From Euprymna scolopes (taxonomy: Eukaryota), in assembly GCA_053919585.1 (NCBI GenBank), contig CM132790.1: a stretch of DNA of 64,000 nucleotides. One strand, written 5' to 3'. Both the position numbers and the translations under genes were made by a program. Under the pieces are notes generated by a model, which was not told where the DNA came from, did not search any database, and saw only the letters and a program-made list of their open reading frames with translations. Below, in pieces: positions 21,743 through 64,000 of this stretch. How positions within the stretch are numbered: position 1 is the stretch's first letter; each line of letters begins with the position of its first letter.

Positions 21743-21810
<68 letters not shown>

Positions 21811-33364: not shown

Positions 33365-35226
33365 CTGAAAAATATTTTATTTCAATCATATTAATAGTTA
33401 ATCTGATTAGAAATGTGATGATAAAGTACTAGTATTAAAAGAAACTATTATTAAAACTGTATTTGTGTCTTGAATTGTACATTTTCTAGGATAGTGTGTA
33501 GATTGTGAACTGCCTCATTTCTAAATCAAATAAATGTATATCAATTGATAATTGTTGATTTTAATTTACTGATATATTTTGTGCTTTAAATTCTTGTTTG
33601 ATAGCGATCAAGTGATTCAGATGATAACATATTTATGTATAAGATGTGATTTGTATTCATGCAACCAACACATTTTAGACACTCACTCTACTAAGTTATT
33701 GTAAAATATTTCAATCCATTCTGCAGATTAGTAAAATTACTAGATAAATAGGCATCCTAAGACAGGTAAAATTCATTTTCCAAACAGAACCATTTTTCCC
33801 TGCCTTGATGTTTCCTCACAAAGATTAAAATCAATGTATTATGACAATAAACCTTATGTATAGAATCCTTATTCCAATTTTGGTCAAACTCAATTAAAGA
33901 ATTGAAATGTTTCAAAATGTCTAGAACTTATTGCTTAAGCTTAAGGTGTCTTTAAGAAGAAATTGAACCCAGAGAATCTTGCTTGATTGGTGTCTTATGA
34001 CCATGGATAAAATTTCATGAAATTCTTAAATATATGAATATTCAAATCACAGGTTATTTCCATCGGTGTCTGCTAAACTCTTTTAACATACTCCAAATAA
34101 ACTGAAAGTTGGGGAATATTGTGTACCAGGAGAAACCTTCACATGCTTTCCCACAGTGACTTAGTCCAAAATATATTGTAGGCTACATTGCATTGTAGAG
34201 AACCTACTGTTTATTTTATAAAATTATTTTTATATATAACGTCTTGAATTAAAGTTTAAAATGCAAAAGTCAAGTATCATGGTTCAATGTGCTCTTAACA
34301 CAAACATTGATTTGAATGCGCCACTGTCATACCAAAGAATCTACTGTTAATTTTATAATGGAAGTTTAAAATAAAAATGTCAAGTATCATTGTTCAATTG
34401 TGCATTAAGAAGAAACATTCATTGCGAACGTGCTTCTGTCATATCAAAGAACCTACTATTGACTTTATATGTTGGGTGTTTCTGTTTGTGTGCTAATAAA
34501 ACTTCTCAATTGCCCTTGTGTTGTTAGGCTGTATAAAATGTTAACTTTGGTCAAAATCGCCTGTTCTTTTTTTCCATTGGATTTTTTTCGATTATCGATA
34601 CTTATTGAAGACATTCAGATGTAAAATGTATCTAAGAACACTGCCGAATACATAAAGTGAATTTGTGTGAAATTTCATAAAAATCGATCCAGACACAGAT
34701 AAAGTTGATTTTATATAATAGTAGAGAAACATATATTTTATATATGTGACAATATTCAAGTAAATTAATTTTTGTTATATAAAATGCTTCTTTAATAATT
34801 ACTAACGGTATCTTTATGGTGTTGTCCGAGATTTAGTTGCATTATTTTAACTTTTAGTTTGTTTGCAAATATCTAAATTGGAAGTAAACAGATTCTATTT
34901 AATTTTTCAATTTTAGAAAATACTTTTTCCGTTTCTTAATTCATATTTGCTGTTGATAAGCTAACATTTTATATAATCATTCGTATGGACTGTATAAGTA
35001 AGTTTTCAAATAGCTATGTACGTTATTTTATTGCTCGGGACATGAAAAACAATAAGCATGAAAATTATCAATGAAAAGGTAAGTCAACATTTGCTTCATA
35101 AATTATAGTCGAGTCTGACTTTAAAAATCCGACAATGCAACTTTATATGTTGGATAAACCCAGAATGATTAAATTGAATTATCATATCTGCAAAAATCAT
35201 TTGAATGGGAAATTAACATGGTTAAC

Positions 35227-36933
35227 TGTTGTAGGGGCTTATCTGTTTGTTAATAATGGACTCTTCCTACTATAAAGACTGGGAGAATGTGCCTCTTGAC
35301 GTTATAAACAACTGTTGTAGTGTAGCCTTATGGAGAAAAATAAACTCTTATTATAAAGACACTAATATTAAACCTTTCAGCATTATTCACAAGTTATGCA
35401 CACTTGGTAATCAGGCTGCTGATTACAAAAGTTTGAAATCTTTACTTTTCCTATCAAAGTCGCACCAACAATTTTCCAGCAAGTTATGGACACTTTGCTG
35501 GAGGAACTTCATTTTTACGATCGCTTACTGACATGAAATCTTAATAAATAGTAAAAGTATTGAAACGCTGGAAACATGCCCAAAGTGTGTTTTCACAAAT
35601 ATGGGACTATGGGCTCAAAATAAAAATAAGAAGAATGTGATTTCTTCATGAAAGAACTCAAATATCTGGGTCATATCATAGATAAAGACGACAGGTGGCC
35701 AGATTCTGAATGGACCACTACAATTAAAGAGATGTCATCTATTAAAAGGTTACGTCTATGAAGAGTTTCCTGAGATTAGAAAATTATTACCAAGCATTTA
35801 TTGCACACAGTTCTCCATCTTTTACTGAAAAACTTTATAAAAATAAGGTTTGGAAATTGACACTCATTGTTCAAGAATACATGTGAACTTTGATGGACCG
35901 TAAGAAGAGTTCTGCTATCTTATTATAGTAGATAGTTACATAAAATTGCTAGAATGATTTAGATGTATGGAAAACATTACATAGGAAATGATAAACCTCT
36001 GGCATGAATTGTTGGTCTGATTTGGGGTTTGATCAATGATTGATAACAGAACTCAATTAACGTTGACTGATTTTGAAGTGCTGTGTAACAATTTCCAAAT
36101 AAAACACATTAGCACCTCTCTGTACCATCCCTGTTAAAACGGCCAGGCAAAGTGTTTTGATCGACACCCTAAAAAACTCCTAAAACATCGCGGCACGCCT
36201 AGAGAAAAGGCCTTAAAGCAATTTTTATGAGTGTATAGGATGATACTAAGCACAAAGATAACTCTTCATTATATCCAGCAGAATTGGTGTTTGCTCGAAA
36301 AATGAAGATCAGTATTTTTAAAAAATTGCTGCCTAAACAAAACATGGGCGAACATCTAAAGTACCAAAGAATCAGTACATTTCAGGTGAAAAGATGTTTT
36401 TTAAGATATGTAAAACAATACATTCTTTTGAGTATATGTTACTATAGAAAAGAATATCGGAAATATAGTCTACATAATCTGAGGCTCTCAGTAATCAAAT
36501 TAGAAAGCAGCCCTTAGATGAAACTTACAGTACGTTACAGGAACATGTAGCAATAGATGCCATTTATGACACCTTAGACCTGGAAGTATTTAAAACAGCC
36601 CCAGAAGAGCAACACTCCTAAAGAAAACAAAAGTTGTTAGACCTTATCAGGATCAACCCAAAGAGAAAATGATACCGAGACTCCTGCAAAGTTAAGGTCT
36701 GGGAGGGAGGTTGTTGTAGTGCTCATCTTACAAATAATAATGAATGCTTCCTATTACTATAAAGACATGAAGAACTTACCTTACAGCGTTATGCACAAAG
36801 TACGCATACATGGCAGTTGGACTGATGTATAACCATTCTTTTTATTTGTTTTATTTATTTTCCTGTTTAGTATATTTTGTTTCAAGTAAATCTAAAATTG
36901 TGTCTTTCTTTATGACCCTTCTTGTGTACAACA
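35227..36933 (+). mobile_element. Decayed Ty3/Gypsy element with LTRs
   Basis: 3' LTR TGTTGTAG...TACAACA at 36712-36933 is preceded by the PPT gggagggagg. Related TGTTGTAG starts occur at 35227 and ~35312. Pol traces KYLGHIIDKD and integrase-like YHP..NGQA. Flanks ttaac / ataac suggest a 5-bp TSD. Confidence 0.8.
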
Positions 36934-37291
36934 ATAACTGAATATGTTATGCTTAATCTTATGTCAAAGAGAATATCAGTATGTCACTGAAATGCAATGG
37001 GTAAACTTAATCGCGATTGCTATATAATATGATAAATTAAAGTAAATAATATTATGTTTGGCATATGACAACGATGAAAAGATAATTTTTTATTAGTATC
37101 GAACATTATTATGCAGCAAATACAATGTTTAAACGGAATTCTTCTATGGACATGCATAGAAAAGCATACAAATATACACAGACATATGCATATTTAAATA
37201 TCAACATCTATGCATATACAAATATATGAGAATTTGGAAATACAAGATATATACTGCAAAACCTTCAAACTTTTTTTATTTTTCAAATAAC

Positions 37292-38628
37292 TTTTTTTAT
37301 ACTGCTTTTTCACCCTAAACGAGGCACAATACCACTTGGGCCTAACGGGCTACTATGTAGGATCAAATTTGCAAGGATACTAAATAGGGAGTTGAGCAGC
37401 AGAATGTCTGTTCATATTACATTTGAACTTCTGCATGTCATTACAGTCAGGATAGCAGGAACTCGAGAGGAAATTTCAAAATATAACCGTTTGGGAAAAT
37501 AAATTATTTGAGTAGAAGGCTTTTAAGCATCTAGGAATGTTTATAGTTTAAGAGTGGGATTTTTCTGCTTGTTGGGTTAGTCAAGAGTATTTACATCGAT
37601 TGCTAAATATGCTTGCAGTTTGCCAGAGCATTTTCTATTAAAATACTTGTAAAATAGGCACATGGAGGCAATATTGAGGCAGTGGGACAGAGGTTAGAAT
37701 TTGGTTGACAGTGCAGGACCTATTAGGTTGGCGACTCTATTTTGAACCCTGTATAGGAGTGAGAAAATAGTAGCAGATTAACTATCCCAGATGTGACAAC
37801 AATACTCCATGCATAAGCGAATGGTGGCCTTGTAGAAGTACAGGATACTCTCGGACATGAGTAATTTTCTAGCATGATAGAGAGAGCTCATCTTCTTCCC
37901 AGCAGCTTGGCAATGCCCTCAATATATGTGCTCTAATTCATGTTCCCTGTGAACATTTAACCAAGGAATTTGAATGAAAAGATTTCAGGTAGCGCATCAT
38001 TAGTCATGGCTATAAGTGGCTGAAAAGATTTCTTGTAATTATTAAAGGAAATAAGCTTAGTCTTAGCAGCATTGAATGTTACCATCCATTTATGACTTTG
38101 GTCCACCACAGACTGGATGGCTTCCTCTTAAGTTTCAGCCATTTCCTTAGATATGTGTACATTTGTTTTCCCGTCATGTCTGTTACAGAGCATGGTGTCA
38201 TCAGCAAATATGGAAATCTCAGAGAAATATGGCATCCCTGTGCCTGTTTTACAAGTACTTTAATGGAAAGTGTTCAGACAGACTCAAATTACTGGGTCTC
38301 CTCAGCATAAATGCCTGCGACAAACCCAACTGGAAATTCAACTTATAAATAGTGCAACAAACAGCAAAATCCCACCCCCACATTATAAAGATTCCTAGAT
38401 GCCGGAACGCCTTCTACTCAAATAGCTGCTTTCAAACTGCTAGACTTATTTCCCTCCCAGGCCCCTGCTTCCCTGGCTCTATTGATATGTAGAAGTTCAA
38501 GTGTAATGTGAATAGACATTTTGCTACCCAACTCCCTACACTGTGTCCGTGCAAATTTCGTCCCAAATAGTAGCCCCTTACGTCTTAGTGGTACTGTGCA
38601 TATTTGGGGTGAAAAATCAGATAAAAAA
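37292..38628. mobile_element. Two CR1-clade LINE fragments joined head-to-head (minus ~37292-38225, plus ~38225-38628)
   Basis: Minus part has the RT motif ISIFADDT (intact in the copy ORF 61538..61816). Plus part reads ASLCLFYKYFNGKCS..KIPRCR. Both end in the same tail tagtagccc...gggtgaaaaa. Confidence 0.82.
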
Positions 38629-39771
38629 GGTTAGTTTCACATAGTGCTAAGATACCTGGGAAATTTGCTAGGAGAAATGATTCTACATAGTTTAAGTTTA
38701 AATAATTTCAACTGTTACCCTGAAAAAATACTGAATCAATATGCACAGTTAAATGTTTTAGGTTATTGCTTTCATAAAATTACTTAGTATTTTGTACCAT
38801 CTTCAAATATAATAAAAGTGAAGTGATTATATGCAAGAGAATGTTGGAGCAAACTTCAGAAATAATTAAATTTTAATATTTGTTAAAATTTGTGTTTAAT
38901 TTTAAAAAAAGGTAATGTAGTAATATTCATTCTGACGTGACAGATTTGTTTTGACAATTAGGAATTTACATTGAAATTGAAGAAATAATGCACACTTGCA
39001 TCGTTGACTTATTGTGTCAAAATAATAAAGAGTCATATAGGTAGGGACTCTTGCATGCCACACATTTTAAAGCCTTTTACCTGTATTTTTTGTTCAAAAG
39101 GAGACACAAAAAATCCAGGCAGTGCTGTTTTAATCTCAAAATGTAAGCGACTCCAGTTGATGGAGAGTGATAGTTCTGGGCCAGATAGTGGTTAGATATT
39201 TCAAATGGGAAAATCAGGATTTGAAAGAAAAATATTTCAATCACTTGGGCTTAAATATGATACTCCGTTCTCTCCCTCCCTCTTTCTATCTTTCTCTATC
39301 TCGGTCGTGTTTTGCCTAAAAGTGAAGAATTGTAAATTAGTTAGCGTTTAGATGCACCTCGTGATGGTGTGGTCACTAGCTAAGCACAAAGTTCGAGCTC
39401 AGAGTAAATAATCGTTCTTACATGCTTAAAAAAATTTCTAAATATATAAGAAAATGTATGTTGCTCATTTTATATAGCATTTGATGATAGAAGATTTGGC
39501 ATTTTAGAAATAACGAAAACAGAGACCTCAGAAAAATCCCAACAAAACGCAGGTGGCATAATGTAAATGATTTTGATTAAAGATGATGTGCTTATCAACT
39601 TTAAGTAATAAATGTAGGGAGCTGGGCGTAACATCAGTAGAAATATCAAGAACATACCAAGCTTACCCTCCAGCAGCAAACTATCGAGTTATATTGGGTT
39701 GATAATACTCTGCATTTTAAATCCAACACAATGAGGGATTTGTGTTTAATAAATGAAACGTTATTACTCAC

Positions 39772-39976
39772 TTGTTTCTTTGATACAAAGTTTAACAGAA
39801 GTTTTCACTTCAACAGGAAACTGAGGATTTCTAGGAATAATTGTAATTCTCAGTACTGTTTCATCTGTACCAGCTGGAATGTTGACAGGTTTGTTATAAT
39901 TTGCTGTGACCTTAGTTGGTGTAGGTATTAATCTTGCTGGAGTAGTTTCTGCCAGAGGTACACCTGTAGTCACTTT
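39772..39976 (-). CDS. Module exon 2 (205 nt), cassette copy 1
   Basis: ttctacAG acceptor and GTGAG donor, phase 0-1. Reads KVTTGVPLAETTP...VLRITIIPRNPQFPVEVKTSVKLCIKET. Confidence 0.92.
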
Positions 39977-40218
39977 CTGTAGAAAACACAGTAATAATGT
40001 ACAATTATAAGAAGTCAATATAAAATATAAAGTAAAACACAGGTGACGATGTAAAATAGCGTTTACTTTCGGTTTCAATCAGCCAAGTGAAATACACGTT
40101 TGACGTGACATTGAGTAAACTAAAAAACAATAAGGTAACAGAATTTTTCATGCCATACTTGCGTTAAACTAAGAACGTAATAAATGTGCTATGTACGTTA
40201 GGAGATGTAAAAATTTAC

Positions 40219-40463
40219 CTGTGTAGTTGTCAGAAATTCAACAAGGTATTTTTGAACATTATCTGTATCGATAAGCTGAATTACACCGCCACCTGTCATC
40301 GAATCTCCAACCGTGATTGTGACCACTCTGTCTTGTTGTGTATATGTTAACCATCCAGGACCACTTGGTCTGATGTCTCCGGGATTTCCACTCGGTTCCA
40401 ATGTAATAGCACTATCAGGCAATACAACATCATCATCCATCCCTTCCAAAAGTGTACACGTCA
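40219..40463 (-). CDS. Module exon 1 (245 nt), cassette copy 1
   Basis: ttcctcatAG acceptor and CAG|GTAAAT donor, phase 1-0. Reads TCTLLEGMDDDVVLPDSAIT...GPGW...NVQKYLVEFLTTTQ. Confidence 0.92.
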
Positions 40464-41361
40464 CTATGAGGAAAGAGTTAAGCAAAAATTAAAATCGTCA
40501 AAAGCTGGTAGTTTTGTCAATTTGTCTGTTGAGAATTTTGACTTGGAACATGCACATTGAGAAAAATAGATAAGAGAAACTTGAAAAAATGCCGTATAAG
40601 CTGTGAGAATATATTTGATTATATCAACAAGTATATACTTTTGATTTAATTTAGTGAACTTATAACAAACGGAAAAAACTTTTCTAAAATTGCAAAGTTA
40701 GGTCCTTTTAGACTTTATGAAAATAACATATATTTGTGCTTTAGTGGCCAACACAGATAAATTATGAGCTAAAAAAAGAAATAGATGTTTATGCCTAGAA
40801 AATAGAGATGTATGTGTGCAGAAATATATTATTTAAAATATATATATATGGTTGTTGTGTGGTTGTATTACGTTTGGTATATTCAAAAAAAAAATATATT
40901 GAAATGTAAATTATATTAGTTTAATATATACATGGTTTATCAATAAACACAGTTTGAAGTGTAAAGTTATTGCTCTCAGGAATTTCATTAGTATCTTTAT
41001 ATTACCCTCAAATATAAAAATCTGCTGTGATATATGCTAGGGTATATTTAAGAAAATTTCAATATAATAATATTTAAATATTCATCTAATTTAGTGTTCA
41101 ATTTTTGTAAGATAAACATAGTTATTTCCAGTTCTACATAGCAACAAGCATATTCTTTTGATTTAATTTAGTGAAATTATTAAAAAAATGAAGATTAATT
41201 TCTAAAATTGCAAAGTTAGATCCTTTTAGAGTTTATGAAAGTAACATATACTTTTGCATCAGTGGCAAAAACAGGTAAATTATAGGCTAAAAACGAAATA
41301 GATGTTTATGCATATAAACAGAGAGACATGTGTGTAGAGACATAGGGATTGAAATATATAC

Positions 41362-41487
41362 CTGGAGGTTGTGTTGTTACCGTAGGAGATGGTGGTGGAA
41401 CACCTGCAGTTGTCGTTGTGGCACCTGGTGCTGGTGTTGACCTTGCTGGTACTGATGTAGTTACACCTGGTCCTGGTGTTGATATAG
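41362..41487 (-). CDS. 126-nt PTS mini-exon (3 x 42 bp)
   Basis: ttttcAG|CT...CCAG|GTATAT, phase 1-1. Reads ISTPGPGVTTSVPARSTPAPGATTTTAGVPPPSPTVTTQPP. Confidence 0.88.
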
Positions 41488-42324
41488 CTGAAAAATATTT
41501 TTATATTAAGCATATTAACAGTGATTCTTATTAGAAAAGTCAATTGACGGCTTACGCAGAAGTCATCTTAACAAGAAATTGAAACTCAGAGAAACTTGTA
41601 ATTCGTGTCTCATGACTAAAAAAGAATTCAAATGCAGGTGTAGAATACATCAATTTACAAATTGAAGGCTGAGCTACTTGTGTCTGTATACTGTCTTAAA
41701 ATACTCCTAAATAAAATGAAATTTTTCAAACATTTATTATTGATGTCTAATTCTTATTGTTAAAATCTGACAAAAATCACAGATATCCACATTTAAACAA
41801 TGACATCCTTGCCTTTTTTTTCTTTTTTTTTTTGCTTTACACAAAATTCGATTGAACTAACGGTTAAATTCATTGCAGAAACTTATGACTTGCAAATTTT
41901 TTCAAATTATATAATGATTAATTTCTTAATAACGATTCATGGAAAATGCACAAATTTACACAGATGTATGCATATGTAAATATTAATATCTATGCATATG
42001 AGAATCCATGAGATTTTTGAAATTCAACTTATAAATAGCGCAAAGGTATTTAGTTTGGTATATTCAAAAAATATAAATATAACACTGAAATGTAACTTAA
42101 TGAGTTTAATATATACATGGTTTATCAATATACACAGTTTGAAGTGTAAAGTAATTGCTCTTGGGAATTTCATTAGTATCTTTATATTACCCTCAAATAA
42201 AAAAATCTGCTGTGGTATATGCTAGGGAATATTGAAGAAAATTTACAAAATAATTACATTTAAATATTCATCTAATTTAGTGTTCAATTTTTGTAAGATA
42301 AACATAGTTATTTGAAATATATAC

Positions 42325-42492
42325 CTGGTGGTTGTGTGGTTGCACCAGGAGGTGGCGTTGTGAAAACTGGAAGTTTTATTGTTGACATAGGAGTTGGCAT
42401 TGGGATACCTCCAGATGTCGTTGTTGCACCTGGTGCTGGTGTTGACCTTGCTGGTACTGATGTAGTTACACCTGGTCCTTGTGTTGATATAG
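42325..42492 (-). CDS. 168-nt PTS mini-exon (4 x 42 bp)
   Basis: tttgcAG acceptor and CCAG|GTATAT donor, phase 1-1, open frame. Confidence 0.88.
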
Positions 42493-44513
42493 CTGCAAAA
42501 TATTTTTATATTAAGCATATTAACAGTGATTCTTATTAGAAAAGTCAATTGACGGCTTATGCTGAAGTCATCTTAACAAGAAATTGAACCTTAGAGAAAC
42601 TTGTAATTAGTGTCTCATGACTAAAAAAGAAATCAAATGCAGGTGTAGAATATATGAATTTACAAAGTGAAGGTATAGTTACATGTATCTGTATACTTTC
42701 TTAAAATACTCCTAAATAAAATTAAATTTGGCAAACATTTATTATTGATGTCTAATCATTATTGTTAAATCTGAAAAAAACTGAAATTTGGAAAATATTT
42801 ATTATTGATGTCTAATCCTTATTATTAAAATCTGACAAAAATCACAGATATCTACATTTAAACAATAACATCCTTGCATTTCTTTTTTGCTTTACATACA
42901 ATTCGATTGGACTAACGGTTAAATTCATTACAGAAACTTATGCCTTGCAACTTGTTTCATATTATATAATGATTAATTTCTTAATAACGATTCATGGAAA
43001 ATGCACAAATGTACACAGATGTAAGCATATGTAAATATCAATATCTATGCATATGAGAATCCATGAGATTTTGGAAATTCAACTTATAAATAGTGCAACA
43101 AACAGCAAAATCCCACCCCCACATTATAAAGACTCCTAGATGCCGGAACGCCTTCTACTCAAATAGCTGCTTTCAAACTGCTAGACTTATTTCCCTCCCA
43201 GGCCCCTGCTTCCCTGGCTCTATTGATATGTAGAAGTTCAAGTGTAATGTGAATAGATATTTTGCTACCCAACTCCCTACACTGTGTCCGTGCAAATTTC
43301 GTCCCAAATAGTAGCCCCTTACGTCTTAGTGGTACTGTGCATATTTGGGGTGAAAAATCAGATAAAAAAGGTTAGTTTCACATAGTGCTAAGATACCTGG
43401 GAAATTTGCTAGGAGAAATGATTCTACATAGTTTAAGTTTAAATAATTTCAACTGTTACCCTGAAAAAATACTGAATCAATATGCACAGTTAAATGTTTT
43501 AGGTTATTGCTTTCATAAAACTAATTAGTATTTTGTACCATCTTCAAATATAATAAAAGTGAAGTGATTATATGCAAGAGAATGTTGGAGCAAACTTCAG
43601 AAATAATTAAATTTTAATATTTGTAAAAATTTGCGTTTAATTTAAAAAAAAAGTTAATGTAGTAATATTCATTCTGACGTGACAGATTTGTTTTGACAAT
43701 TAGGAATTTACATTGAAACTGAAGAAATAATGCACACTTGCATCGTTGACTTATTGTGTCAAAATAATAAAGAGTCATATAGGTAGGGACTCTTGCATGC
43801 CACACATTTTAAAGCCTTTTACCTGTATTTTTTGTTCAAAAGGAGACACAAAAAATCCAGGCAGTGCTGTTTTAATCTCAAAATGTAAGCGACTCCAGTT
43901 GACGGAGAGTGATAGTTCTGGGCCAGATAGTGGTTAGAAATTTCAAATGGGAAAATCAGGATTTGAAAGAAAAATATTTCAATCACTTGGGCTTAAATAT
44001 GATACTCCGTTCTCTCCCTCCCTCTTTATATCTTTCTCTATCTCGGTCGTGTTTTGCCTAAAAGTGAAGAATTGTAAATTAGTTAGCGTTTAGATGCACC
44101 TCGTGATGGTGTGGTCACTAGCTAAGCACAAAGTTCGAGCTCAGAGTAAATAATCGTTCTTACATGCTTAAAAATTTTTCTAAATATATAAGAAAATGTA
44201 TGTTGCTCATTTTATATAGCATTTGATGACAGAAGATTTGGCATTCCAGAAATAACGAAAACAGAGACCTCAGAAAAATCCCAACAAAACGCAGGTGGCA
44301 TAATGTAAATGATTTTGATTAAAGATGATGTGCCTATCAACTTTAAGTAATAAATGTAGGGAGCTGGGCGTAACATCAGTAGAAATATCAAGAACATACC
44401 AAGCTTACCCTCCAGCAGCAAACTATCGGGTTATATTGGGCTGATAATACTCTGCATTTTAAATCCAACACAATGAGGGATTTGTGTTTAATAAAGGAAA
44501 CGTTATTACTCAC

Positions 44514-44718
44514 TTGTTTCTTTGATACAAAGTTTAACAGAAGTTTTCACTTCAACAGGAAACTGAGGATTTCTAGGAATAATTGTAATTCTCAGTACTG
44601 TTTCATCTGTACCAGCTGGAATGTTGACAGGTTTGTTATAATTTGCTGTGACCTTAGTTGGTGTAGGTATTAATCTTGCTGGAGTAGTTTCTGCCAGAGG
44701 TACACCTGTAGTCACTTT
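44514..44718 (-). CDS. Module exon 2, cassette copy 2
   Basis: Same boundaries and 205-nt length as copy 1. Confidence 0.9.
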
Positions 44719-44960: not shown

Positions 44961-45205
44961 CTGTGTAGTTGTCAGAAATTCAACAAGGTATTTTTGAACA
45001 TTATCTGTATCGATAAGCTGAATTACACCGCCACCTGTCATCGAATCTCCAACCGTGATTGTGACCACTCTGTCTTGTTGTGTATATGTTAACCATCCAG
45101 GACCACTTGGTCTGATGTCTCCGGGATTTCCACTCGGTTCCAATGTAATAGCACTATCAGGCAATACAATATCATCATCCATCCCTTCCAAAAGTGTACA
45201 CGTCA
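44961..45205 (-). CDS. Module exon 1, cassette copy 2
   Basis: Same boundaries and 245-nt length; one V>I difference from copy 1. Confidence 0.9.
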
Positions 45206-52716: not shown

Positions 52717-52921
52717 TTGTTTCTTTGATACAAAGTTTAACAGAAGTTTTCACTACAACAGGAAACTGAGGATTTCTAGGAATAATTGTAATTCTCAGTA
52801 CTGTTTCATCTGTACCAGCTGGAATGTTGACAGGTTTGTTATAATTTGCTGTGACCTTAGTTGGTGTAGGTATTAATCTTGCTGGAGTAGTTTCTGCCAG
52901 AGGTACACCTGTAGTCACTTT
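52717..52921 (-). CDS. Module exon 2, cassette copy 3
   Basis: 205 nt with AG/GT boundaries; E>V difference (PVVVKT). Confidence 0.9.
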
Positions 52922-53163: not shown

Positions 53164-53408
53164 CTGTGTAGTTGTCAGAAATTCAACAAGGTATTTTTGA
53201 ACATTATCTGTATCGATAAGCTGAATTACACCGCCACCTGTCATCGAATCTCCAACCGTGATTGTGACCACTCTGTCTTGTTGTGTATATGTTAACCATC
53301 CAGTACCACTTGGTCTGATGTCTCCGGGATTTCCACTCGGTTCCAATGTAATAGCACTATCAGGCAATACAATATCATCATCCATCCCTTCCAAAAGTGT
53401 ACACGTCA
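53164..53408 (-). CDS. Module exon 1, cassette copy 3
   Basis: 245 nt with AG/GT boundaries; SGTGW variant. Confidence 0.9.
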
Positions 53409-54428: not shown

Positions 54429-55537
54429 CTGCAAAATATTTTTATATTAAGCATATTAACAGTGATTCTTATTAGAAAAGTCAATTGACGGCTTATGCTG
54501 AAGTCATCTTAACAAGAAATTGAACCTTAGAGAAACTTGTAATTAGTGTCTCATGACTAAAAAAGAAATCAAATGCAGGTGTAGAATATATGAATTTACA
54601 AAGTGAAGGTATAGTTACATGTATCTGTATACTTTCTTAAAATACTCCTAAATAAAATTAAATTTGGCAAACATTTATTATTGATGTCTAATCATTATTG
54701 TTAAATCTGAAAAAAAACTGAAATTTGGAAAATATTTATTATTGATGTCTAATCCTTATTGGTAAAATCTGACAAAAATCACAGATATCCAAATTTAAAC
54801 AATGACATCCTTGCCTTTTCTTTTGTGCTTTACACAAAATTCGATTGAACTAACGGTTAAATTCATTGCAGAAACTTATGACTTGAAACTTATTTCAAAT
54901 TATATAATGACTAATTTCTTAATAACGATTCATGGAAAATGCACAAATGTACACAGATGTATGCATATGTAAATATCAATATCTATGCATATGAGAATCC
55001 ATGAGATTTTGGAAATTCAACTTATAAATACTGCAAAAGTTTAAAGTTCGTTATATTAAAAAAAATATAACACTGAAATGTAAATTAATGTGTTTAATAT
55101 ATATATATGGTTTATCAATATACACAGTTTGAAATTAAAAGCTGTTGCTCTGAGGAATTTCATTAGTATCTTTATATTACCCTCAAATATAAAAATCTGC
55201 TGTGATATATCCTAGGAGATATTGAAGAAAATTTAAAAAAAATATATATTTAAATATTCATCTAATGTTGTGTTAAATTTTTATAAGATAAACGTAGTTA
55301 TTTTCACTTCTATATAGCAACAAGCATATTCTTTTGATTTAATTTAGTGAAATTATCCAAAAAATGAAGATAAATTTCTAAAATTGCAAAGTTAGATCCT
55401 TTTAGATTTTATGAAATTAACGTATGCTTTGGCTTCCGTGGCAAAAACAGGTAAATTATAGGCTAGAAACGAAATAGATGTTTATGCATATAAACAGAGA
55501 GAAATGTGTGCAGAAACATAGGAATTGAAATATATAC

Positions 55538-55705
55538 CTGGTGGTTGTGTGGTTGCACCAGGAGCTGGCGTTGTGAAAACTGGAGGTTTTATTGTTGACA
55601 TAGAAGGTGGCGTTGGCATACCTTCAGCTGTCGTTGTGGCACCTGGTGCTGGTGTTGACCTTGCTGGTACTGATGTAGTTACACCTGGTCCTGGTGTTGA
55701 TATAG
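55538..55705 (-). CDS. 168-nt PTS mini-exon
   Basis: AG/GT boundaries, phase 1-1. Confidence 0.87.
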
Positions 55706-56746
55706 CTGCAAAATATTTTTATATTAAGCATATTAACAGTGATTCTTATTAGAAAAGTCAATTAATAGCTTATGCTGAAGTCATCTTAACAAGAAATTGA
55801 ACCTTAGAGAAACTTGTAATTAGTGTCTCATGACTAAAATAGAAATCAAATGCAGGTGTAGAATATATGAATTTACAAAGTGAACGTATAGCTACATGTA
55901 TCTGTATACTTCCTTAATATACTCTTAAATAAATATTTATTATTCATGTCTAATCCTTATTGTTAAAATCTGACAAAAATCACAGATATCCACATTTAAA
56001 TAATGACATCCTTGCATTATTTTTTGCTTTTCACAAAATTCGATTGAACTAACGCTTAAATTCATTACAGAAACTTATGCCTTGCAACTTATTTCAAATT
56101 ATATAATAATTAATTACTTAATAACGATTCATGGAAAATGCACAAATGTATACAGCATATGTATATGCATATGTAAATATCAATATCTATGCATATGAGA
56201 ATCCATGAGATTTTGGAAATTCAACTTATAAATAGTTCAAAGGTATTTAGTTTGGTATATTAAAAAAAATATAAAGATAACACTGAAATGTAAATTAATG
56301 AGTTTAATATATACATGGTTTATCAATATACACAGTTTGAAGTGTAATGTTATTGCTCTCAGGAATTTCATTAGTATCTTTATATTACCCTCAAATATAA
56401 AAATCTGCTGTGATATATGCTAGGGAATATTGAAGAAAATTTAAAAAGAAATATATATTTAAATAGTCATCTAATTTAGTGTTCAATTTTTGTAAAATAA
56501 ACATAGTTATTTACAGTTCCACATAGCAACAAGCATATTCTTTTGATTTAATTTAGTGCAATTATTAAAAAAATGAATATTAATTTCTAAAATTGCAAAG
56601 TTAGATCCCTTTAGAGTTTATGAAATTAACATATACATTTGCATCAGTGGCAAAAACAGGTAAATTATAGGCAACAAACGAAATAGATGTTTAGGCATAT
56701 ACAGAGAGAGACATGTGTGCAGAAACATAGGAATTGAAATATATAC

Positions 56747-56914
56747 CTGGTGGTTGTGTGGTTGCACCAGGAGCTGACGTTGAGATACCTGGAGGTTGTG
56801 TTGTTACGCTAGGAGATGGTGGTGGAACACCTGCAGTTGTCCTTGTGGCACCTGGTGCTGGTGTTGACCTTGCTGGTACTGATGTAGTTACACCTGGTCC
56901 TGGTGTTGATATAG
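56747..56914 (-). CDS. 168-nt PTS mini-exon (variant ...PSPSVTTQPPGISTSAPGATTQPP)
   Basis: AG/GT boundaries, phase 1-1. Confidence 0.87.
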
Positions 56915-57961
56915 CTGAAAGATATTTTTATATTAAGCATATTAACAGTGATTCTTATTAGAAAAGTGAATTGATGGCTTATGCTAAAGTGGTCTTCACA
57001 AGAAATTGAAACTCAGAGAAACTTGTAATTAGTGTCTAATGACAAAAAAAGAAATCAAATGCAGGTGTAGAATATATGAATTTACAAATTGAAGGTATAG
57101 CTACTTGTGTCTGTGTACTTCCTTAAAATACTCCCAAATAAAATGAAATTTGGCAAACATTTATTATTGATGTCTAATCCTTATTGGTAAAATCTGACAA
57201 AAATCACAGATATCCAAATTTAAACAATGACATCCTTGCCTTTTCTTTTGTGCTTTACACAAAATTCGATTGAACTAACGGTTAAATTCATTGCAGAAAC
57301 TTATGACTTGAAACTTATTTCAAATTATATAATGACTAATTTCTTAATAACGATTCATGGAAAATGCACAAATGTACACAGATGTATGCATATGTAAATA
57401 TCAATATCTATGCATATGAGAATCCATGAGATTTTGGAAATTCAACTTATAAATACTGCAAAAGTTTAAAGTTCGTTATATTAAAAAAAATATAACACTG
57501 AAATGTAAATTAATGTGTTTATATATATATATGGTTTATCAATATACACAGTTTGAAATTAAAAGCTGTTGCTCTGAGGAATTTCATTAGTATCTTTATA
57601 TTACCCTCAAATATAAAAATCTGCTGTGATATATCCTAGGAGATATTGAAGAAAGTTAAAAAAAAATATATATTTAAATATTCATCTAATGTAGTGTTAA
57701 ATTTTTATAAGATAAACGTAGTTATTTTCACTTCTATATAGCAACAAGCATATTCTTTTGATTTAATTTAGTGAAATTATCCAAAAAATGAAGATAAATT
57801 TCTAAAATTGCAAAGTTAGATCCTTTTAGATTTTATGATATTAACGTATGCTTTGGCTTCCGTGGCAAAAACAGGTAAATTATAGGCTAGAAACGAAATA
57901 GATGTTTATGCATATAAACAGAGAGAAATGTGTGCAGAAACATAGGAATTGAAATATATAC

Positions 57962-58129
57962 CTGGTGGTTGTGTGGTTGCACCAGGAGCTGGCGTTGTGA
58001 AAACTGGAGGTTTTATTGTTGACATAGAAGGTGGCGTTGGCATACCTTCAGCTGTCGTTGTGGCACCTGGTGCTGGTGTTGACCTTGCTGGTACTGATGT
58101 AGTTACACCTGGTCCTGGTGTTGATATAG
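57962..58129 (-). CDS. 168-nt PTS mini-exon
   Basis: AG/GT boundaries, phase 1-1. Confidence 0.87.
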
Positions 58130-58804
58130 CTGAAAAATATTTTTATATTAAGCATATTAACAGTTATTCTTATTAGAAAAGTCAATTAATAGCTTATGCT
58201 GAACACTATCTAAGAACACTGCCGAATACATAAAGTGAATTTGTGTGAAATTTCATAAAAATCGATCCAGACACAGATAAAGTTGATTTTATATAATAGT
58301 AGAGAAACATATATTTTATATATGTGACAATATTCAAGTAAATTAATTTTTGTTATATAAAATGCTTCTTTAATAATTACTAACGGTATCTTTATGGTGT
58401 TGTCCGAGATTTAGTTGCATTATTTTAACTTTTAGTTTGTTTGCAAATATCTAAATTGGAAGTAAACAGATTCTATTTAATTTTTCAATTTTAGAAAATA
58501 CTTTTTCCGTTTCTTAATTCATATTTGCTATTGATAAGCTAACATTTTATATAATCATTTGTATGATCTGTATAAGTAAGTTTTCAAATAGCTATGTACG
58601 TTATTTTATTGCCCCGGACATGAAAAACAATAAGCATGAAAATTATCAATGAAAAGGTAAGTCAACATTTGCTTCATAAATTATAGTCGAGTCTGACTTT
58701 AAAAATCCGACAATGCAACTTTATATGTTGGATAAACCCAGAATGATTAAATTGAATCATCACATCTGCAAAAATCATTTGGATGGGAAATTAACATGGT
58801 TAAC

Positions 58805-60514
58805 TGTTGTAGGGGCTTATCTGTTGGTCAATAATGGACTCTTCCTACTATAAAGACTGGGAGAATGTGCCTCTTGACGTTATAAACAACTGTTGTAGTG
58901 TACGCCTTATGGAGAAAAATAAACTCTTATTATAAAGACCGGAATATTAAACCTTTCAGTATTATGCACAAGTCATGCACACTTGGTAATCAGGCTGCTG
59001 ATTACAAAAGTTTGAAATCTTTGCTTTTCCTATCAAAGTCGCACCAACAATTTTCCAGCAAGTTATGGACACTTTGTTGGAGGAACTTCATTTTTACGAT
59101 CGCTTACTGACATGAAATCTTAATAAATAGTAAAAGTATTGAAACGCTGGAAACATGCCCAAAGTGTGTTTTCACAAATATGGGACTATGGGCTCAAAAT
59201 AAAAATAAGAAGAATGTGATTTCTTCATGAAAGAACTCAAATATCTGGGTCATATCATAGATAAAGACGACAGGTGGCCAGATTCTGAATGGACCACTAC
59301 AATTAAAGAGATGTCATCTATTAAAAGGTTACGTCTATGAAGAGTTTCCTGAGATTAGAAAATTATTACCAAGCATTTATTCCACACAGTTCTCCATCTT
59401 TTACTGAAAAACTTTATAAAAATAAGGGTTGGAAATTGACACTCATTGTTCAAGAATACATGTGAACTTTGATGGACCGTAAGAAGAGTTCTGCTATCTT
59501 ATTATAGTAGATAGTTACATAAAATTGCTAGAATGATTTAGATGTATGGAAAACATTACATAGGAAATGATAAACCTCTGGCATGAATTGTTGGTCTGAT
59601 TTGGGGTTTGATCAATGATTGATAACAGAACTCAATTAACGTTGACTGATTTTGAAGTGCTGTGTAACAATTTCCAAATAAAACACATTAGCACCTCTCT
59701 GTACCATCCCTGTTAAAACGGCCAGGCAAAGCGTTTTGATCGACACCCTAAAAAAACTCCTAAAACATTGCGGCACGCCTAGAGAAAAGGCCTTAAAGCA
59801 ATTTTTATGAGTGTATAGGATGATACTAAGCACAAAGATAAATCTTCATTATATCCAGCAGAATTGGTGTTTGCTCGAAAAATGAAGATCAGTATTTTAA
59901 AAAATTGCTGCCTAAACAAAGCATGGGCGAACATCTAAAGTACCAAAGAATCAGTACATTCCAGGTGAAAAGATGTTTTTTTAAGATATGTAAAACAATA
60001 CATTCTTTTGAGTATATGTTACTATAGAAAAGAATATCGGAAATATAGTCTACATAATCTGAGGCTCTCAGTAATCAAATTAGAAAGCAGCTCTTAGATG
60101 AAACTTACAGTACGTTACAGGAACATGTAGCAATAGATGCCATTTATGACACCTTAGACCTGGAAATATTTAAAACAGCCCCAGAAGAGCAACACTCCTA
60201 AAGAAAAACAAAAGTTGTTAGACCTTATCAGGATCAACCCAAAGAGAAAATGATACCGAGACTCCTGCAAAGTTAAGGTCTGGGAGGGAGGTTGTTGTAG
60301 TGCTCATCTTACAAATAATAATGAATGCTTCCTATTACTATAAAGACGTGAAGAACTTACCTTACAGCGTTATGCACAAAGTACGCATACATGGCAGTTG
60401 GACTGATGTATACCCATTCTTTTTATTTGTTTTATTTATTTTCCTGTTCAGTATATTTTGTTTCAAGTAAATCTAAAATTGTGTCTTTCTTTATGACCCT
60501 TCTTGTGTACAACA
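58805..60514 (+). mobile_element. Duplicated copy of the Gypsy relic
   Basis: Near-identical to 35227-36933. Confidence 0.8.
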
Positions 60515-60872
60515 ATAACTGAATATGTTATGCTTAATCTTATGTCAAAGAGAATATCAGTATGTCACTGAAATGCAATGGGTAAACTTAGTCGCGATTG
60601 CTATATAATATGATAAATTAAAGTAAATAATATTATGTTTGGCATATGATAACGATGAAAAGATAATTTTTTATTAGTATCGAACATTATTATGCAGCAA
60701 ATACAATATTTAAACGGAATTCTTCTATGGACATGCATAGAAAAGCATACAAATATACACAGACATATGCATATTTAAATATCAACATCTATGCATATAC
60801 AAATATATGAGAATTTGGAAATACAAGATATATACTGCAAAACCTTCAAACTTTTTTTATTTTTCAAATAAC

Positions 60873-62181
60873 TTTTTTTATACTGCTTTTTCACCCTAAA
60901 CGAGGCACAATACCACTTGGGCCTAACGGGCTACTATGTAGGATCAAATTTGCAATGATACTAAATAGGGAGTTGAGCAGCAGAATGTCTGTTCATATTA
61001 CATTTGAACTTCTGCATGTCATTACAGTCAGGATAGCAGGAACTCGAGAGGGAATTTCCAAATATAACCGTTTGGGAAAAGAAATTATTTGAGTAGAAGG
61101 CTTTTTAGCATCTAGGAATGTTTATAGTTTAAGAGTGGGATTTTTCTGCTTGTTGGGTTAGTCAAGAGTATTTACATCGATTGCTAAATATGCTTGCAGT
61201 TTGCCAGAGCATTTTCTATTAAAATACTTGTAAAATAGGCACAGGGAGGCAATATTGAGGCAGTGGGACAGAGGTTAGAATTTGGCTGACAGTGCAGGAC
61301 CTATTAGGTTGGCGACTCTATTTTGAACCCTGTATAGGAGTGAGAAAATAGTAGCAGATTAACTATCCCAGATGTGACAACAATACTCCATGCATAAGCG
61401 AATGGTGGCCTTGTAGAAGTACAGGATACTCTCGGACATGAGTAATTTTCTAGCATGATAGAGAGAGCTCATCTTCTTCCCAGCAGCTTGGCAATGCCCT
61501 CAATATATGTGCTCTAATTAATGTTCCCTGTGAACATTTAACCAAGGAATTTGAATGAAAAGATTTCAGGTAGCGCATCATTAGTCATGGCTATAAGTGG
61601 CTGAAAAGATTTCTTGTAATTATTAAAGAAAAAAAGCCTAGTCTTAGCAGCATTGAATGTTACCATCCATTTATGACTTTGGTCCACCACAGACTGGATG
61701 GCTTCCTCTAAAGTTTCAGCCATTTCCTTAGATATGTGTACATTTGTTTTCCCGTCATGTCTGTTACAGAGCATGGTGTCATCAGCAAATATGGAAATCT
61801 CAGAGAAATATGGCATCCCTGTGCCTGTTTTACAAGTACTTTAATGGAAAGTGTTCAGACAGACTCAAATTACTGGGTCCCCTCAGCATAAATGCCTGCG
61901 ACAAACCCAACAAACAGCAAAATCCCACCCCCACATTGTAAAGATTCCTAGATGCCGGAACGCCTTCTACTCAAATAGCTGCTTTCAAACTGCTAGACTT
62001 ATTTCCCTCCCAGGCCCCTGCTTCCCTGGCTCTATTGATATGTAGAAGTTCAAGTGTAATGTGAATAGACATTTTGCTACCCAACTCCCTACACTGGGTC
62101 CGTGCAAATTTCGTCCCAAATAGTAGCCCCTTACGTCTTAGTGGTACTGTGCATATTTGGGGTGAAAAATCAGATAAAAAA
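60873..62181. mobile_element. Duplicated copy of the head-to-head CR1 pair
   Basis: ORF 61538..61816 contains ISIFADDT..KWMVTFNAAKT; plus fragments at 61744-62045. Confidence 0.82.
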
Positions 62182-63326
62182 GGTTAGTTTCACATAGTGC
62201 TAAGATACCTGGGAAATTTGCTAGGAGAAATGATTCTACATAGTTTAAGTTTAAATAATTTCAACTGTTACCCTGAAAAAATACTGAATCAATATGCACA
62301 GTTAAATGTTTTAGGTTGTTGCTTTCATAAAACTAATTAGTATTTTGTACCATCTTCAAATATAATAAAAGTGAAGTGTATATATGCAAGAGAATGTCTG
62401 AGCAAACTTCAGAAATAATTAAATTTTAATATTTGTAAAAATTTGCGTTTAATTTAAAAAAAAAAGGTAATGTAGTAATATTCATTCTGACGTGACAGAT
62501 TTGTTTTGACAATTAGGAATTTACATTGAAATTGAAGAAATAATGCACACTTGCATCGTTGACTTATTGTGTCAAAATAATAAAGAGTCATATAGGTAGG
62601 GACTCTTGCATGCCACACATTTTAAAGCCTTTTACCTGTATTTTTTGTTCAAAAGGAGACACAAAAAATCCAGGCAGTGCTGTTTTAATCTCAAAATATA
62701 AGCGACTCCAGTTGACGGAGAGTGATAGTTCTGGGCCAGATAGTGGTTAGAAATTTCAAATGGGAAAATCAGGATTTGAAAGAAAAATATTTCAATCACT
62801 TGGGCTTAAATATGATACTCCGTTCTCTCCCTCCCTCTTTCTATCTTTCTCTATCTCGGTCGTGTTTTGCCTAAAAGTGAAGAATTGTAAATTAGTTAGC
62901 GTTTAGATGCACCTCGTGATGGTGTGGTCACTAGCTAAGCACAAAGTTCGAGCTCAGAGTAAATAATCGTTCTTACATGCTTAAAAAAATTTCTAAATAT
63001 ATAAGAAAATGTATGTTGCTCATTTTATATAGCATTTGATGACAGAAGATTTGGCATTCCAGAAATAACGAAAACAGAGACCTCAGAAAAATCCCAACAA
63101 AACGCAGGTGGCATAATGTAAATGATTTTGATTAAAGATGATGTGCCTATCAACTTTAAGTGATAAATGTAGGGAGCTGGGCGTAACATCAGTAGAAATA
63201 TCAAGAACATACCAAGCTTACCCTCCAGCAGCAAACTATCGGGTTATATTGGGTTGATAATACTCTGCATTTTAAATCCAACACAATGAGGGATTTGTGT
63301 TTAATAAATGAAACGTTATTACTCAC

Positions 63327-63531
63327 TTGTTTCTTTGATACAAAGTTTAACAGAAGTTTTCACTTCAACAGGAAACTGAGGATTTCTAGGAATAATTGTA
63401 ATTCTCAGTACTGTTTCATCTGTACCAGCTGGAATGTTGACAGGTTTGTTATAATTTGCTGTGACCTTAGTTGGTGTAGGTATTAATCTTGCTGGAGTAG
63501 TTTCTGCCAGAGGTACACCTGTAGTCACTTT
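63327..63531 (-). CDS. Module exon 2, cassette copy 4
   Basis: 205 nt with AG/GT boundaries. Confidence 0.9.
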
Positions 63532-63773
63532 CTGTAGAAAACACAGTAATAATGTACAATTATAAGAAGTCAATATAAAATATAAAGTAAAACACAGGTG
63601 ACGATGTAAAATAGCGTTTACTTTCGGTTTCAATCAGCCAAGTGAAATACACGTTTGACGTGACATTGAGTAAACTAAAAAACAATAGGGTAACAGAATT
63701 TTTCATGCCATACTTGCGTTAAACTAAGAACGTAATAAATGTGCTATGTACGTTAGGAGATGTAAAAATTTAC

Positions 63774-64000
63774 CTGTGTAGTTGTCAGAAATTCAACAAG
63801 GTATTTTTGAACATTATCTGTATCGATAAGCTGAATTACACCGCCACCTGTCATCGAATCTCCAACCGTGATTGTGACCACTCTGTCTTGTTGTGTATAT
63901 GTTAACCATCCAGTACCACTTGGTCTGATGTCTCCGGGATTTCCACTCGGTTCCAATGTAATAGCACTATCAGGCAATACAATATCATCATCCATCCCTT
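63774..64000 (-). CDS. Module exon 1, cassette copy 4 (5' end beyond the window)
   Basis: CAG|GTAAAT donor. Reads EGMDDDIVLPDSAIT...EFLTTTQ. Confidence 0.9.

What the first reader, a model, noticed from the sequence alone, without database searches (positions are those of the whole stretch)
34630..64000. Very recent intragenic cassette amplification gives four near-identical modules with variable linker number
Units of ~8.5, ~4.5, ~10.6 and >5.8 kb are almost identical even across introns and dead transposons, while the fifth module at 20.7-24.1 kb is only ~70% identical in protein. A nested ~1.2-kb exon+intron unit (spacings 1235, 1209, 1215, 1238 and 963 bp) sets linker length at 2 or 4 mini-exons (98 versus 210 aa). 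Repeat scales therefore run from 42 bp to 1.2 kb to 5-11 kb, and all preserve frame. Copy-number polymorphism is plausible.
Basis: seen in the sequence. Interest (0 to 1): 0.7.

Follow-up and report, generated by a model that had tools for sequence, protein, structure and literature searches.

The report
Amplified domain cassettes in giant mucin gene
A huge mucin-like gene of a probable cephalopod has recently multiplied a two-exon, discoidin-like domain plus its small Thr/Pro-rich spacer exons into at least 14 near-identical in-frame copies (four of them in this window), much as the human LPA and DMBT1 genes have done.

Summary
Units of 8.4, 4.5, 10.6 and more than 5.8 kb are 98-99% identical through introns and dead LINE pieces. 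The mini-exon spacings are 963 to 1238 bp, and the linkers are 98 or 210 aa. The module at 20.7-24.1 kb is about 70% identical in protein.

The gene lies on the minus strand. All cassette exons are symmetric in phase, so any copy number keeps the frame.

"Four modules" is an effect of the window edge. The array runs on for another 113 kb and holds 14 intact modules, at window-scale coordinates 34629-177561.
- Ten modules differ by only 0-0.4%.
- Three of the four in the window (M1, M2, M4) are the older type, at 1.2-2.1%.
- Blocks of 19-32 kb are duplicated at 99.5-99.75%.
- One intact LINE insertion was copied to three linkers.

Together these point to repeated unequal crossing-over.

A spliced transcript contig joins mini-exon, exon A and exon B exactly at the predicted sites. 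Contig depths in one DNA run scale with the assembly's copy numbers, which argues against over-assembly. No raw DNA reads were available, so copy-number polymorphism remains untested.

A homologue of the module folds like a discoidin (F5/8 type C) domain, although Pfam gives no match. The locus holds at least 88 such modules over about 840 kb.

This is a new member of a known kind, comparable to LPA KIV-2 and DMBT1.

The parts
34629..64000 (-). In-window part of the tandem cassette array. Unit junctions are at 43072, 47589 and 58207. The array continues to about 177561 on the window's scale (C8:104647561).
40219..40463 (-). Module M1, exon A (245 nt, phase 1 to 0).
   Evidence: AG/GT intact
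39772..39976 (-). Module M1, exon B (205 nt, phase 0 to 1). A 242-nt intron separates it from exon A.
44961..45205 (-). Module M2, exon A.
   Evidence: The spliced X9 contig joins 45205 to a mini-exon donor and 44961 to 44718.
44514..44718 (-). Module M2, exon B.
53164..53408 (-). Module M3, exon A. This is the young type, identical to M8 over 2.9 kb.
52717..52921 (-). Module M3, exon B.
63774..64000 (-). Module M4, exon A. It runs 18 nt over the window edge, to 64018.
63327..63531 (-). Module M4, exon B.
41362..41487 (-). Mini-exon S (126 nt, 42 aa, phase 1-1). Other S copies are at 46107-46232 and 54303-54428.
42325..42492 (-). Mini-exon La (168 nt, 56 aa, phase 1-1). Other La copies are at 47345-47512, 55538-55705 and 57962-58129.
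56747..56914 (-). Mini-exon Lb (168 nt), the third exon of the four-exon linker.
37601..38516 (.). Two truncated LINE reverse-transcriptase fragments in opposite orientations, inside the long intron and copied along with the unit.
27044..33364 (-). Giant Thr/Pro-rich exon (6321 nt, 2107 codons, about 150 units of 42 nt, phase 1-1). Its acceptor and donor contexts match those of the mini-exons. It lies directly downstream of M1 in the gene.
20738..24144 (-). Diverged fifth module. Exon A is at about 23902-24144 and exon B at about 20738-20935, with a roughly 3-kb intron between them.
   Evidence: An X9 transcript contig joins an exon-B end to the exon at about 7540.
1..5250 (-). Second giant Thr-rich exon (18-nt, 6-aa repeat). 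It runs off the window start.

Best explanation
The stretch is the 3' part of a 143-kb tandem array inside a very large mucin-like gene on the minus strand.

Each cassette holds a two-exon, 150-aa module with a discoidin-like fold, a long intron carrying dead LINE pieces, and two or four small Thr/Pro-rich spacer exons. Each spacer exon sits in its own 1.2-kb unit. Every exon or exon pair starts and ends in phase 1, so any number of cassettes or spacer units can be gained or lost without breaking the frame.

The array grew, and is kept uniform, by repeated unequal crossing-over between misaligned cassettes, often in blocks of two or three modules. This gave 14 modules. Ten of them are 0-0.4% apart, and the older variants sit at or near the edges.

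Shown here: the repeat anatomy, the intact frames and splice sites, splicing of spacer exon to exon A to exon B, stronger conservation of exons than introns, and the fold of a homologue.

Inferred: the recombination mechanism, the recency on a population time scale, and the product. The product would be a secreted, heavily O-glycosylated protein that presents many identical binding domains on glycosylated spacers.
For: There are 14 modules, all with AG/GT sites and open frames. Ten of the 14 have identical coding sequence.

All 55 mini-exons examined are intact and phase 1-1.

Pairwise divergence over 2.9 kb is 0-0.4% among M3 and M5-M13, 1.2-2.1% for M1, M2 and M4, and 0.9% for M14.

Multi-module blocks: 32.5 kb at 99.5% and 19.3 kb at 99.75%.

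One 3155-bp intact LINE (APE+RT) sits at the same site in three linkers, with the copies 99.6-99.8% identical. That means one insertion followed by block duplication.

Variable sites number 3 of 450 in exons against 97 of 2388 in introns, Fisher p = 6.5e-5.

An X9 transcript contig of 531 nt at depth 92 joins a mini-exon donor to exon A and exon A to exon B at the predicted bases. The mini-exon to module depth ratio is 2.9, against 2.9-3.1 in the genome.

There are no N runs between 18642 and 204000 on the window's scale.

In run X1, contig depth per assembled copy is 16.6-22 for elements of multiplicity 10 to 41, against 12.5 for an M2-specific contig.

Fold: the AlphaFold model of the Octopus homologue has pLDDT above 90 over the module. 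VIA-align gives Z 11-12.5, rmsd 3.0 A over about 126 residues, against neuropilin b1/b2, factor VIII C2 and DDR domains. Both module exons align in order to that homologue.
Against: No raw DNA reads or long reads were available, so the copy number is not verified read by read. The tool itself warns that contig depths are not copy numbers. My single-copy anchor rests on one short contig, and run X1 may be the very sample that was assembled.

The two poly-A RNA runs with raw reads showed almost no expression (2 and 22 reads, the latter on a transposon). Transcript support therefore comes from contigs of one run.

The junctions from exon B to the next spacer exon, and between spacer exons, were not seen in RNA.

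Polishing with multi-mapped reads could make copies look more alike than they are.

All three exonic differences are non-synonymous.
Confidence: 0.8

Rival explanations
1. Assembly artefact. The true array is much shorter, and haplotypes or collapsed and re-expanded repeats were strung in tandem.
For: Block pairs at 99.5-99.75% are as alike as alleles. An unplaced 37-kb contig (C531) duplicates window 1-25260 at 98.7-99.9%, so haplotype separation near this locus was imperfect. No raw DNA reads were available to test the point.
Against: Two haplotypes can at most double an array; they cannot make 14 copies with three linker types. There is no gap anywhere in the array. Most copies carry private variants. 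X1 contig depths scale with assembled multiplicity, and the module contig is about 20 times an M2-specific contig. That implies 0.76 to 1.5 times the assembled number, not fewer. Seven runs from three studies hold more than half of the sampled words.
Confidence: 0.08
2. An old array kept uniform by short-tract gene conversion, with no recent gain of copies.
For: Edge copies (M1, M2, M14) and M4 are 1-2% diverged, so the array itself is older than its core. Other sub-arrays of the same module family in the locus show that arrays persist.
Against: Identity runs unbroken for 19-32 kb across several modules, introns and transposons. A single LINE insertion is present at the same site in exactly three linkers, with flanks that match over tens of kb. 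Linker size classes follow the blocks. These are signs of block duplication, not of patchy conversion.
Confidence: 0.1
3. The modules are exons of several tandem genes rather than of one gene.
For: The gene ends were not found. The module family spans about 840 kb on one strand, which is large for a single transcription unit.
Against: Within 26901-201404 every predicted exon is phase-compatible, with no terminal or first exon in sight. Transcript contigs join a spacer exon to a module, and the diverged module to the next downstream exon.
Confidence: 0.07

Closest known systems
Human LPA kringle IV type 2 repeat (PMC6314250)
   Same: A multi-kb tandem unit (5.6 kb) holds two exons that together encode one domain. 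Copies are near-identical through the introns and the frame is kept at any copy number. LPA has 1 to more than 40 copies per allele.
   Different: This unit also carries 2 or 4 spacer exons and transposon debris, varies from 4.7 to 18 kb, and shows multi-module higher-order blocks. The domain is discoidin-like, not a kringle. Polymorphism has not been shown here.
Human DMBT1 / salivary agglutinin SRCR-SID array (PMC4851238)
   Same: A mucin-like secreted glycoprotein with a regular array of binding domains separated by short Ser/Thr/Pro-rich spacer exons. Both one-domain and four-domain blocks vary in copy number (7-20 domains), and the mutation rate is very high.
   Different: In DMBT1 the domain is SRCR. 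From my own knowledge (not checked here), each SRCR domain is one exon. In this gene the domain is a two-exon discoidin-like module, the spacers are 98 or 210 aa made of 126/168-nt exons, and giant Thr/Pro-rich exons of 6.3 kb and more than 5 kb lie in the same gene.
CysD-PTS alternation in gel-forming mucins MUC2/MUC5AC/MUC5B (from my own knowledge, not checked here)
   Same: Small globular domains interrupt long O-glycosylated repeat regions, and the number of domain-plus-PTS segments varies.
   Different: In those mucins the central region is one giant exon. Here each element is a separate exon with its own intron.
Octopus bimaculoides uncharacterised protein LOC106867630 (XP_052821907, P0014)
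   Same: The same module (48% identity over exon A, and collinear over exon B), followed by a Thr-rich mucin tail.
   Different: The record shows a single module. No array is known, and the protein has not been studied.

Membership tests
Intragenic multi-kb exon-cassette tandem repeat (LPA KIV-2 / DMBT1 type) | Head-to-tail multi-kb units, each with whole exons and introns | tested here: met
   14 units of 4.7-18 kb.
Intragenic multi-kb exon-cassette tandem repeat (LPA KIV-2 / DMBT1 type) | The unit's coding length is a multiple of three with matching phases, so copy number changes keep the frame | tested here: met
   450, 126 and 168 nt, all phase 1 at both ends.
Intragenic multi-kb exon-cassette tandem repeat (LPA KIV-2 / DMBT1 type) | Near-identity extends through the introns | tested here: met
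   98-100% including introns and transposon pieces.
Intragenic multi-kb exon-cassette tandem repeat (LPA KIV-2 / DMBT1 type) | The cassettes are spliced into the mRNA | tested here: met
   the X9 contig joins a spacer exon to exon A to exon B at the predicted sites. The other junctions were not seen.
Intragenic multi-kb exon-cassette tandem repeat (LPA KIV-2 / DMBT1 type) | Copy number differs between individuals | tested here: inconclusive
   depth in one run fits 0.76 to 1.5 times the assembled number. There were no raw DNA reads and no second individual.
Discoidin / F5/8 type C domain (Pfam PF00754) | Sequence match to the Pfam model | tested here: not met
   no Pfam family at E up to 1 for either exon; none for full-length homologues P0014 and P0016. 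The joined module itself was not searched, by instruction.
Discoidin / F5/8 type C domain (Pfam PF00754) | Eight-stranded beta-sandwich that superposes on solved discoidin domains over the whole domain | tested here: met
   on the Octopus homologue: Z 11-12.5, rmsd about 3.0 A, about 126 of 142 residues. The top 30 rows are almost all neuropilin b1/b2, factor VIII C2 and DDR.
Discoidin / F5/8 type C domain (Pfam PF00754) | One Cys near each end of the domain (the N-to-C disulfide of discoidin domains, from my own knowledge) | tested here: met
   Cys at position 2 of exon A and in the conserved C-terminal motif of exon B, in all copies and paralogues. The bond itself was not tested.
Gel-forming mucin | Long Pro/Thr/Ser tandem-repeat coding regions | tested here: met
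   a 6321-nt exon of 42-nt repeats and a second exon of more than 5 kb of 18-nt repeats.
Gel-forming mucin | VWD/C8/TIL assemblies and a cystine-knot end in the same gene | not tested
   The gene ends were not located. More distant proteins with this module carry TIL and VWC domains or are named VWFD proteins.

The most novel reading that the evidence does not exclude
The whole 840-kb, one-strand cluster (C8:104046370-104882905) could be one or very few giant genes. It holds at least 88 discoidin-like modules in five or more separately homogenised sub-arrays. Module and spacer numbers would then differ between individuals, giving each animal its own set of mucin isoforms with different valency for a glycan or microbial ligand, as DMBT1 does in humans.
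Probability: 0.2. Interest if true: 0.7.

Novelty: new member of a known kind. Interest (0 to 1): 0.45.

Why it matters
This is a clean non-vertebrate example of a protein built by very recent exon-cassette amplification at four nested scales: 42 bp, 1.2 kb, 5-18 kb and 19-32 kb.

The copies are less diverged (0-0.4%) than the likely allelic divergence nearby (about 1%). The array is therefore expected to vary in the population and to challenge assemblers and annotators.

The amplified unit is an unannotated domain family with a discoidin-like fold, tied to mucin-type proteins in molluscs and flatworms. The locus would be a natural system for asking how domain valency in mucus proteins evolves.

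It adds no new principle beyond LPA and DMBT1.

Tried and rejected
- The repeat finder on the whole window was swamped by the 18- and 42-nt arrays, so I used self-BLAST instead.
- Pfam gave no match for either module exon or the mini-exons.
- The ESM Atlas feature search gave only scores of 0.82 or less to unnamed bacterial clusters, which is no lead.
- I first read the high share of words held by small runs as a sign of multi-copy DNA at low coverage. I dropped this when one search showed that the "million letters" are contig totals, not read amounts.
- The RNA runs with raw reads (X19, X16) were nearly empty on the stretch. The plan to estimate copy ratios from variant shares in RNA reads therefore failed.
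- The flank 33450-34628, which I hoped was single-copy, has a second copy beyond the array at 99% and is half transposon. It could not serve as a depth control.
- The unplaced contig C531 looked like a second haplotype but ends at window 25260, short of the array.
- C531 spans the two N runs of the window. I did not read or use its letters there.
- By instruction, the joined (spliced) module was neither searched nor folded. I searched the exons separately and folded a database homologue instead.
Full report
**Coordinates.** The window is G000:C8:104470001-104534000, in a genome of 5.9 Gb and 925 contigs. I joined the window to the next 140 kb (L001-L014). Positions above 64000 are on that extended scale (C8 position minus 104470000).

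**Observation.**
- 34629-41776 matches 47589-54716 at 98.0%.
- 34629-40445 matches 58207-64000 at 98.2%.
- 38331-41776 matches 43072-46520 at 97.7%.
- 43072-47585 matches 51276-55779 at 98.8%.
- 46516-53390 matches 57136-64000 at 98.5%.

The units therefore start at 34629, 43072, 47589 and 58207, and measure 8443, 4517, 10618 and more than 5793 bp. The 4.5-kb unit lacks the 3.7 kb that corresponds to 34629-38331. The shared sequence includes two truncated LINE fragments at 37601-38516.

**Strand and exon model.** The coding strand is minus. The reverse complements of the 18-nt and 42-nt tandem repeats read as Thr/Pro-rich peptides, and the long open frames are all on the minus strand. Reading the DNA gives the following exons.
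- Mini-exon S is 41487..41362: 126 nt, acceptor AG, donor GT, phase 1 at both ends.
- Mini-exon La is 42492..42325: 168 nt, with the same contexts.
- Module exon A is 40463..40219: 245 nt, phase 1 to 0.
- A 242-nt intron follows.
- Module exon B is 39976..39772: 205 nt, phase 0 to 1, with a consensus-like donor.

The module is therefore 450 nt (150 aa). The linkers are 98 aa (S+La) or 210 aa (S+La+Lb+La). The mini-exons are three or four 14-codon units. Spacings between mini-exon ends are 963, 1238, 1235, 1209 and 1215 bp.

The giant exon just downstream of M1 is 33364..27044. It has 6321 nt (2107 codons, 150.5 units of 42 nt) and the same acceptor and donor contexts as the mini-exons. The fifth module at 20738-24144 is 69% (exon A) and 73% (exon B) identical in protein.

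**The array is larger than the window shows.** A search of the whole genome with the 722-nt module found 14 copies at 99-100% between C8:104509767 and 104646830. On the extended sequence, all 14 modules (M1-M14) have intact AG/GT sites, a 242-nt internal intron and open frames. Ten have identical coding sequence. Only three nucleotide positions vary, and all three changes are non-synonymous. All 55 mini-exons examined are intact.

The linkers going upstream from M1 are 2, 2, 4, 2, 2, 4, 4, 4, 4, 2, 4, 4 and 4 mini-exons. The 14 modules and 13 linkers encode 4270 aa in one frame. The array spans 34629-177561.

Upstream of the array lie, in order:
- a single Lb-like mini-exon;
- a truncated second copy of the giant exon with its intron (178154-184736, 98% to window 30874-37384);
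- eleven La mini-exons at 1208-bp spacing, with a stronger 2416-bp period (98.1% against 94.0%).

**History of the copies.** Over a 2.9-kb core shared by all 14 units, M3 and M5-M13 differ by 0-0.4%, and M3 and M8 are identical. M14 is 0.9% from them, and M1, M2 and M4 are 1.2-2.1% from the others. Three of the four in-window modules are therefore the older type.

Long matches reveal duplicated multi-module blocks:
- 84185-116637 = 127423-159918, 32.5 kb at 99.5%;
- 108002-127262 = 140644-159918, 19.3 kb at 99.75%;
- 46516-74609 = 108588-136709, 28 kb at 99.1%.

A 3155-bp LINE with an intact 1005-aa ORF (endonuclease plus reverse transcriptase) sits at exactly the same site in the linkers after M7, M11 and M13. 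The copies are 99.6-99.8% identical. That means one insertion followed by block duplication. This pattern is what repeated unequal crossing-over produces, and it is hard to obtain from short-tract conversion alone.

Exons are about six times less variable than introns among the copies: 3 of 450 sites against 97 of 2388, Fisher p = 6.5e-5. The coding parts are therefore under constraint.

**Is it real DNA and a real gene?** There is no N run between 18642 and 204000. Only contigs were available for DNA runs, and raw reads only for RNA. I laid four runs on 39700-45699.
- The two poly-A RNA runs were nearly silent.
- Run X9 holds a 531-nt contig (depth 92) that reads: last 79 nt of a mini-exon, then exon A, then exon B. 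It is joined exactly at 41362/45205 and at 44961/44718 (ends GT..AG on the coding strand).
- Another X9 contig joins an exon-B end at 39772 to sequence that translates to a peptide found in the minus-strand frame at about window 7540. It has 2 mismatches in 43 nt, which fits the diverged module. The transcript therefore continues downstream.
- The X9 depth of the mini-exon contig (264) is 2.9 times that of the module contig (92). This matches the genomic ratio of 31-mer multiplicities (40.7 against 12.9-14).

In DNA run X1, a 2178-nt unspliced contig (depth 245.7) carries the majority letters of M3 and M5-M13. I divided the depths of six X1 contigs by the multiplicity of their 31-mers in the assembled 204 kb. 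This gives 16.6-22 per assembled copy for multiplicities from 10 to 41. A contig specific to M2 has depth 12.5.

Depending on whether that M2 variant is homozygous, X1 holds about 0.76 to 1.5 times the assembled number of copies, not a small fraction of it. This is weak evidence for three reasons. The tool warns that contig depth is not copy number. The anchor is a single contig. And X1 may be the assembled sample itself.

**What the module is.** Neither exon hits Pfam, and the ESM Atlas gave nothing useful. A profile of exon A from nine paralogues (A1) found only 40 representatives among 1.84 billion proteins. They include an uncharacterised Octopus bimaculoides protein, a chiton "mucin-2-like" protein, Macrostomum VWFD proteins, and metagenome proteins that carry TIL and VWC domains.

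Instead I folded the Octopus homologue P0014 with an alignment of family members (A2). Its module (residues 17-160) has pLDDT above 90.
- Foldseek's best hits are factor VIII C2, the DDR2 discoidin domain and neuropilin b1 (E 7e-4).
- VIA-align gives Z 11-12.5, rmsd about 3.0 A over about 126 residues, for whole discoidin domains.
- Both window exons align in order to that module, at 48% and 37% identity.

The module is therefore discoidin-like in fold but fails the sequence test for PF00754. Two earlier notes (s1-288468, s1-259257) proposed the same reading.

**Wider locus.** The exon-A profile finds at least 88 modules on C8 between 104046370 and 104882905, all on the minus strand. They fall into several separately homogenised sub-arrays: two with a 2.5-kb period, this one, and about 24 modules at roughly 7.5-kb spacing that begin only about 19 kb upstream of the last mini-exon I mapped. 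Cassette amplification has therefore happened repeatedly here. Whether this is one gene is open.

**Organism.** It is coded in the tools. I infer a mollusc, probably a decapodiform cephalopod, from three things: the closest named homologue is from Octopus, a "mollusc metagenome" RNA run holds part of the stretch, and the genome is 5.9 Gb with more than 40 large contigs.

**Timing (inference).** The unplaced contig C531 is collinear with window 1-25260 at 98.7-99.9% and is probably the other haplotype. If so, allelic divergence here is about 1%, more than the 0-0.4% among the ten young copies. That places the last expansions within the time scale of current polymorphism and makes copy-number variation likely. 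C531 does not reach the array. It spans the window's two N runs, and I did not read its letters there.

**Comparison with known systems.** The closest parallels are two human genes.
- LPA KIV-2 is a 5.6-kb unit with two exons (160 and 182 bp) encoding one kringle, present in 1 to more than 40 copies per allele (PMC6314250).
- DMBT1 is a regular array of SRCR domains separated by SID spacers. One-domain and four-domain blocks vary in copy number, giving 7-20 domains, and the mutation rate is 0.7-2.7% per generation (PMC4851238).

The present array combines features of both: a two-exon domain, spacer exons and multi-domain blocks. It adds transposon-laden introns and a different domain.

**Verdict.** This is a new member of a known kind and of moderate interest.

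Noticed in passing
C8:104046370-104882905 (outside the window): There are at least 88 copies of the module's exon A, all on the minus strand, in five or more separately homogenised sub-arrays. These include nine identical copies at 2.5-kb spacing and about 24 at roughly 7.5-kb spacing. A few further copies lie on C13 and C12.
   Followed up: partly
Extended scale 94226-97380, 137489-140643 and 166160-169314 (L004 and later loci): An intact 3155-bp LINE (1005-aa ORF with endonuclease and reverse transcriptase) lies in the gene's orientation, inside a linker intron. It is present three times because the block around it was duplicated.
   Followed up: yes
Extended scale 178154-184736: A second, truncated copy of the giant Thr/Pro-rich exon with its upstream intron (98% to window 30874-37384) lies just upstream of module 14. 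Its 3' end joins a mini-exon unit and has no obvious GT donor at the break, so it is unclear whether it is still an exon.
   Followed up: partly
Extended scale 184738-198020: A run of eleven 168-nt mini-exons at 1208-bp spacing has a two-unit higher-order period: 98.1% identity at offset 2416 against 94.0% at offset 1208.
   Followed up: partly
L022 (C23:120729595-120730304): An isolated 711-bp piece of the module (exon A, the 242-nt intron and the start of exon B) lies on another chromosome at 97.6-97.9% identity. It is a DNA-level copy, not a retrocopy.
   Followed up: partly
C531 (L026-L029), against window 1-25260: An unplaced 37-kb contig is collinear with the window's first 25 kb at 98.7-99.9%, and is probably the other haplotype. 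It spans the window's two N runs, but its letters there were not read.
   Followed up: partly
Window 43100-43300: A short interspersed repeat has a contig depth of about 41,500 in DNA run X1. It also drew the only reads of RNA run X16.
   Followed up: no
Window 10000-12200, minus strand: Open frames that look like gag and protease pieces of an LTR retroelement lie in a GC-richer stretch (44%), between the diverged module and the downstream Thr-rich exon.
   Followed up: no
Run X7 (organism B): A DNA run labelled as a different organism holds 56% of the sampled 31-letter words of 33450-43449, as much as runs of organism A. This suggests a very close relative or a labelling difference.
   Followed up: no
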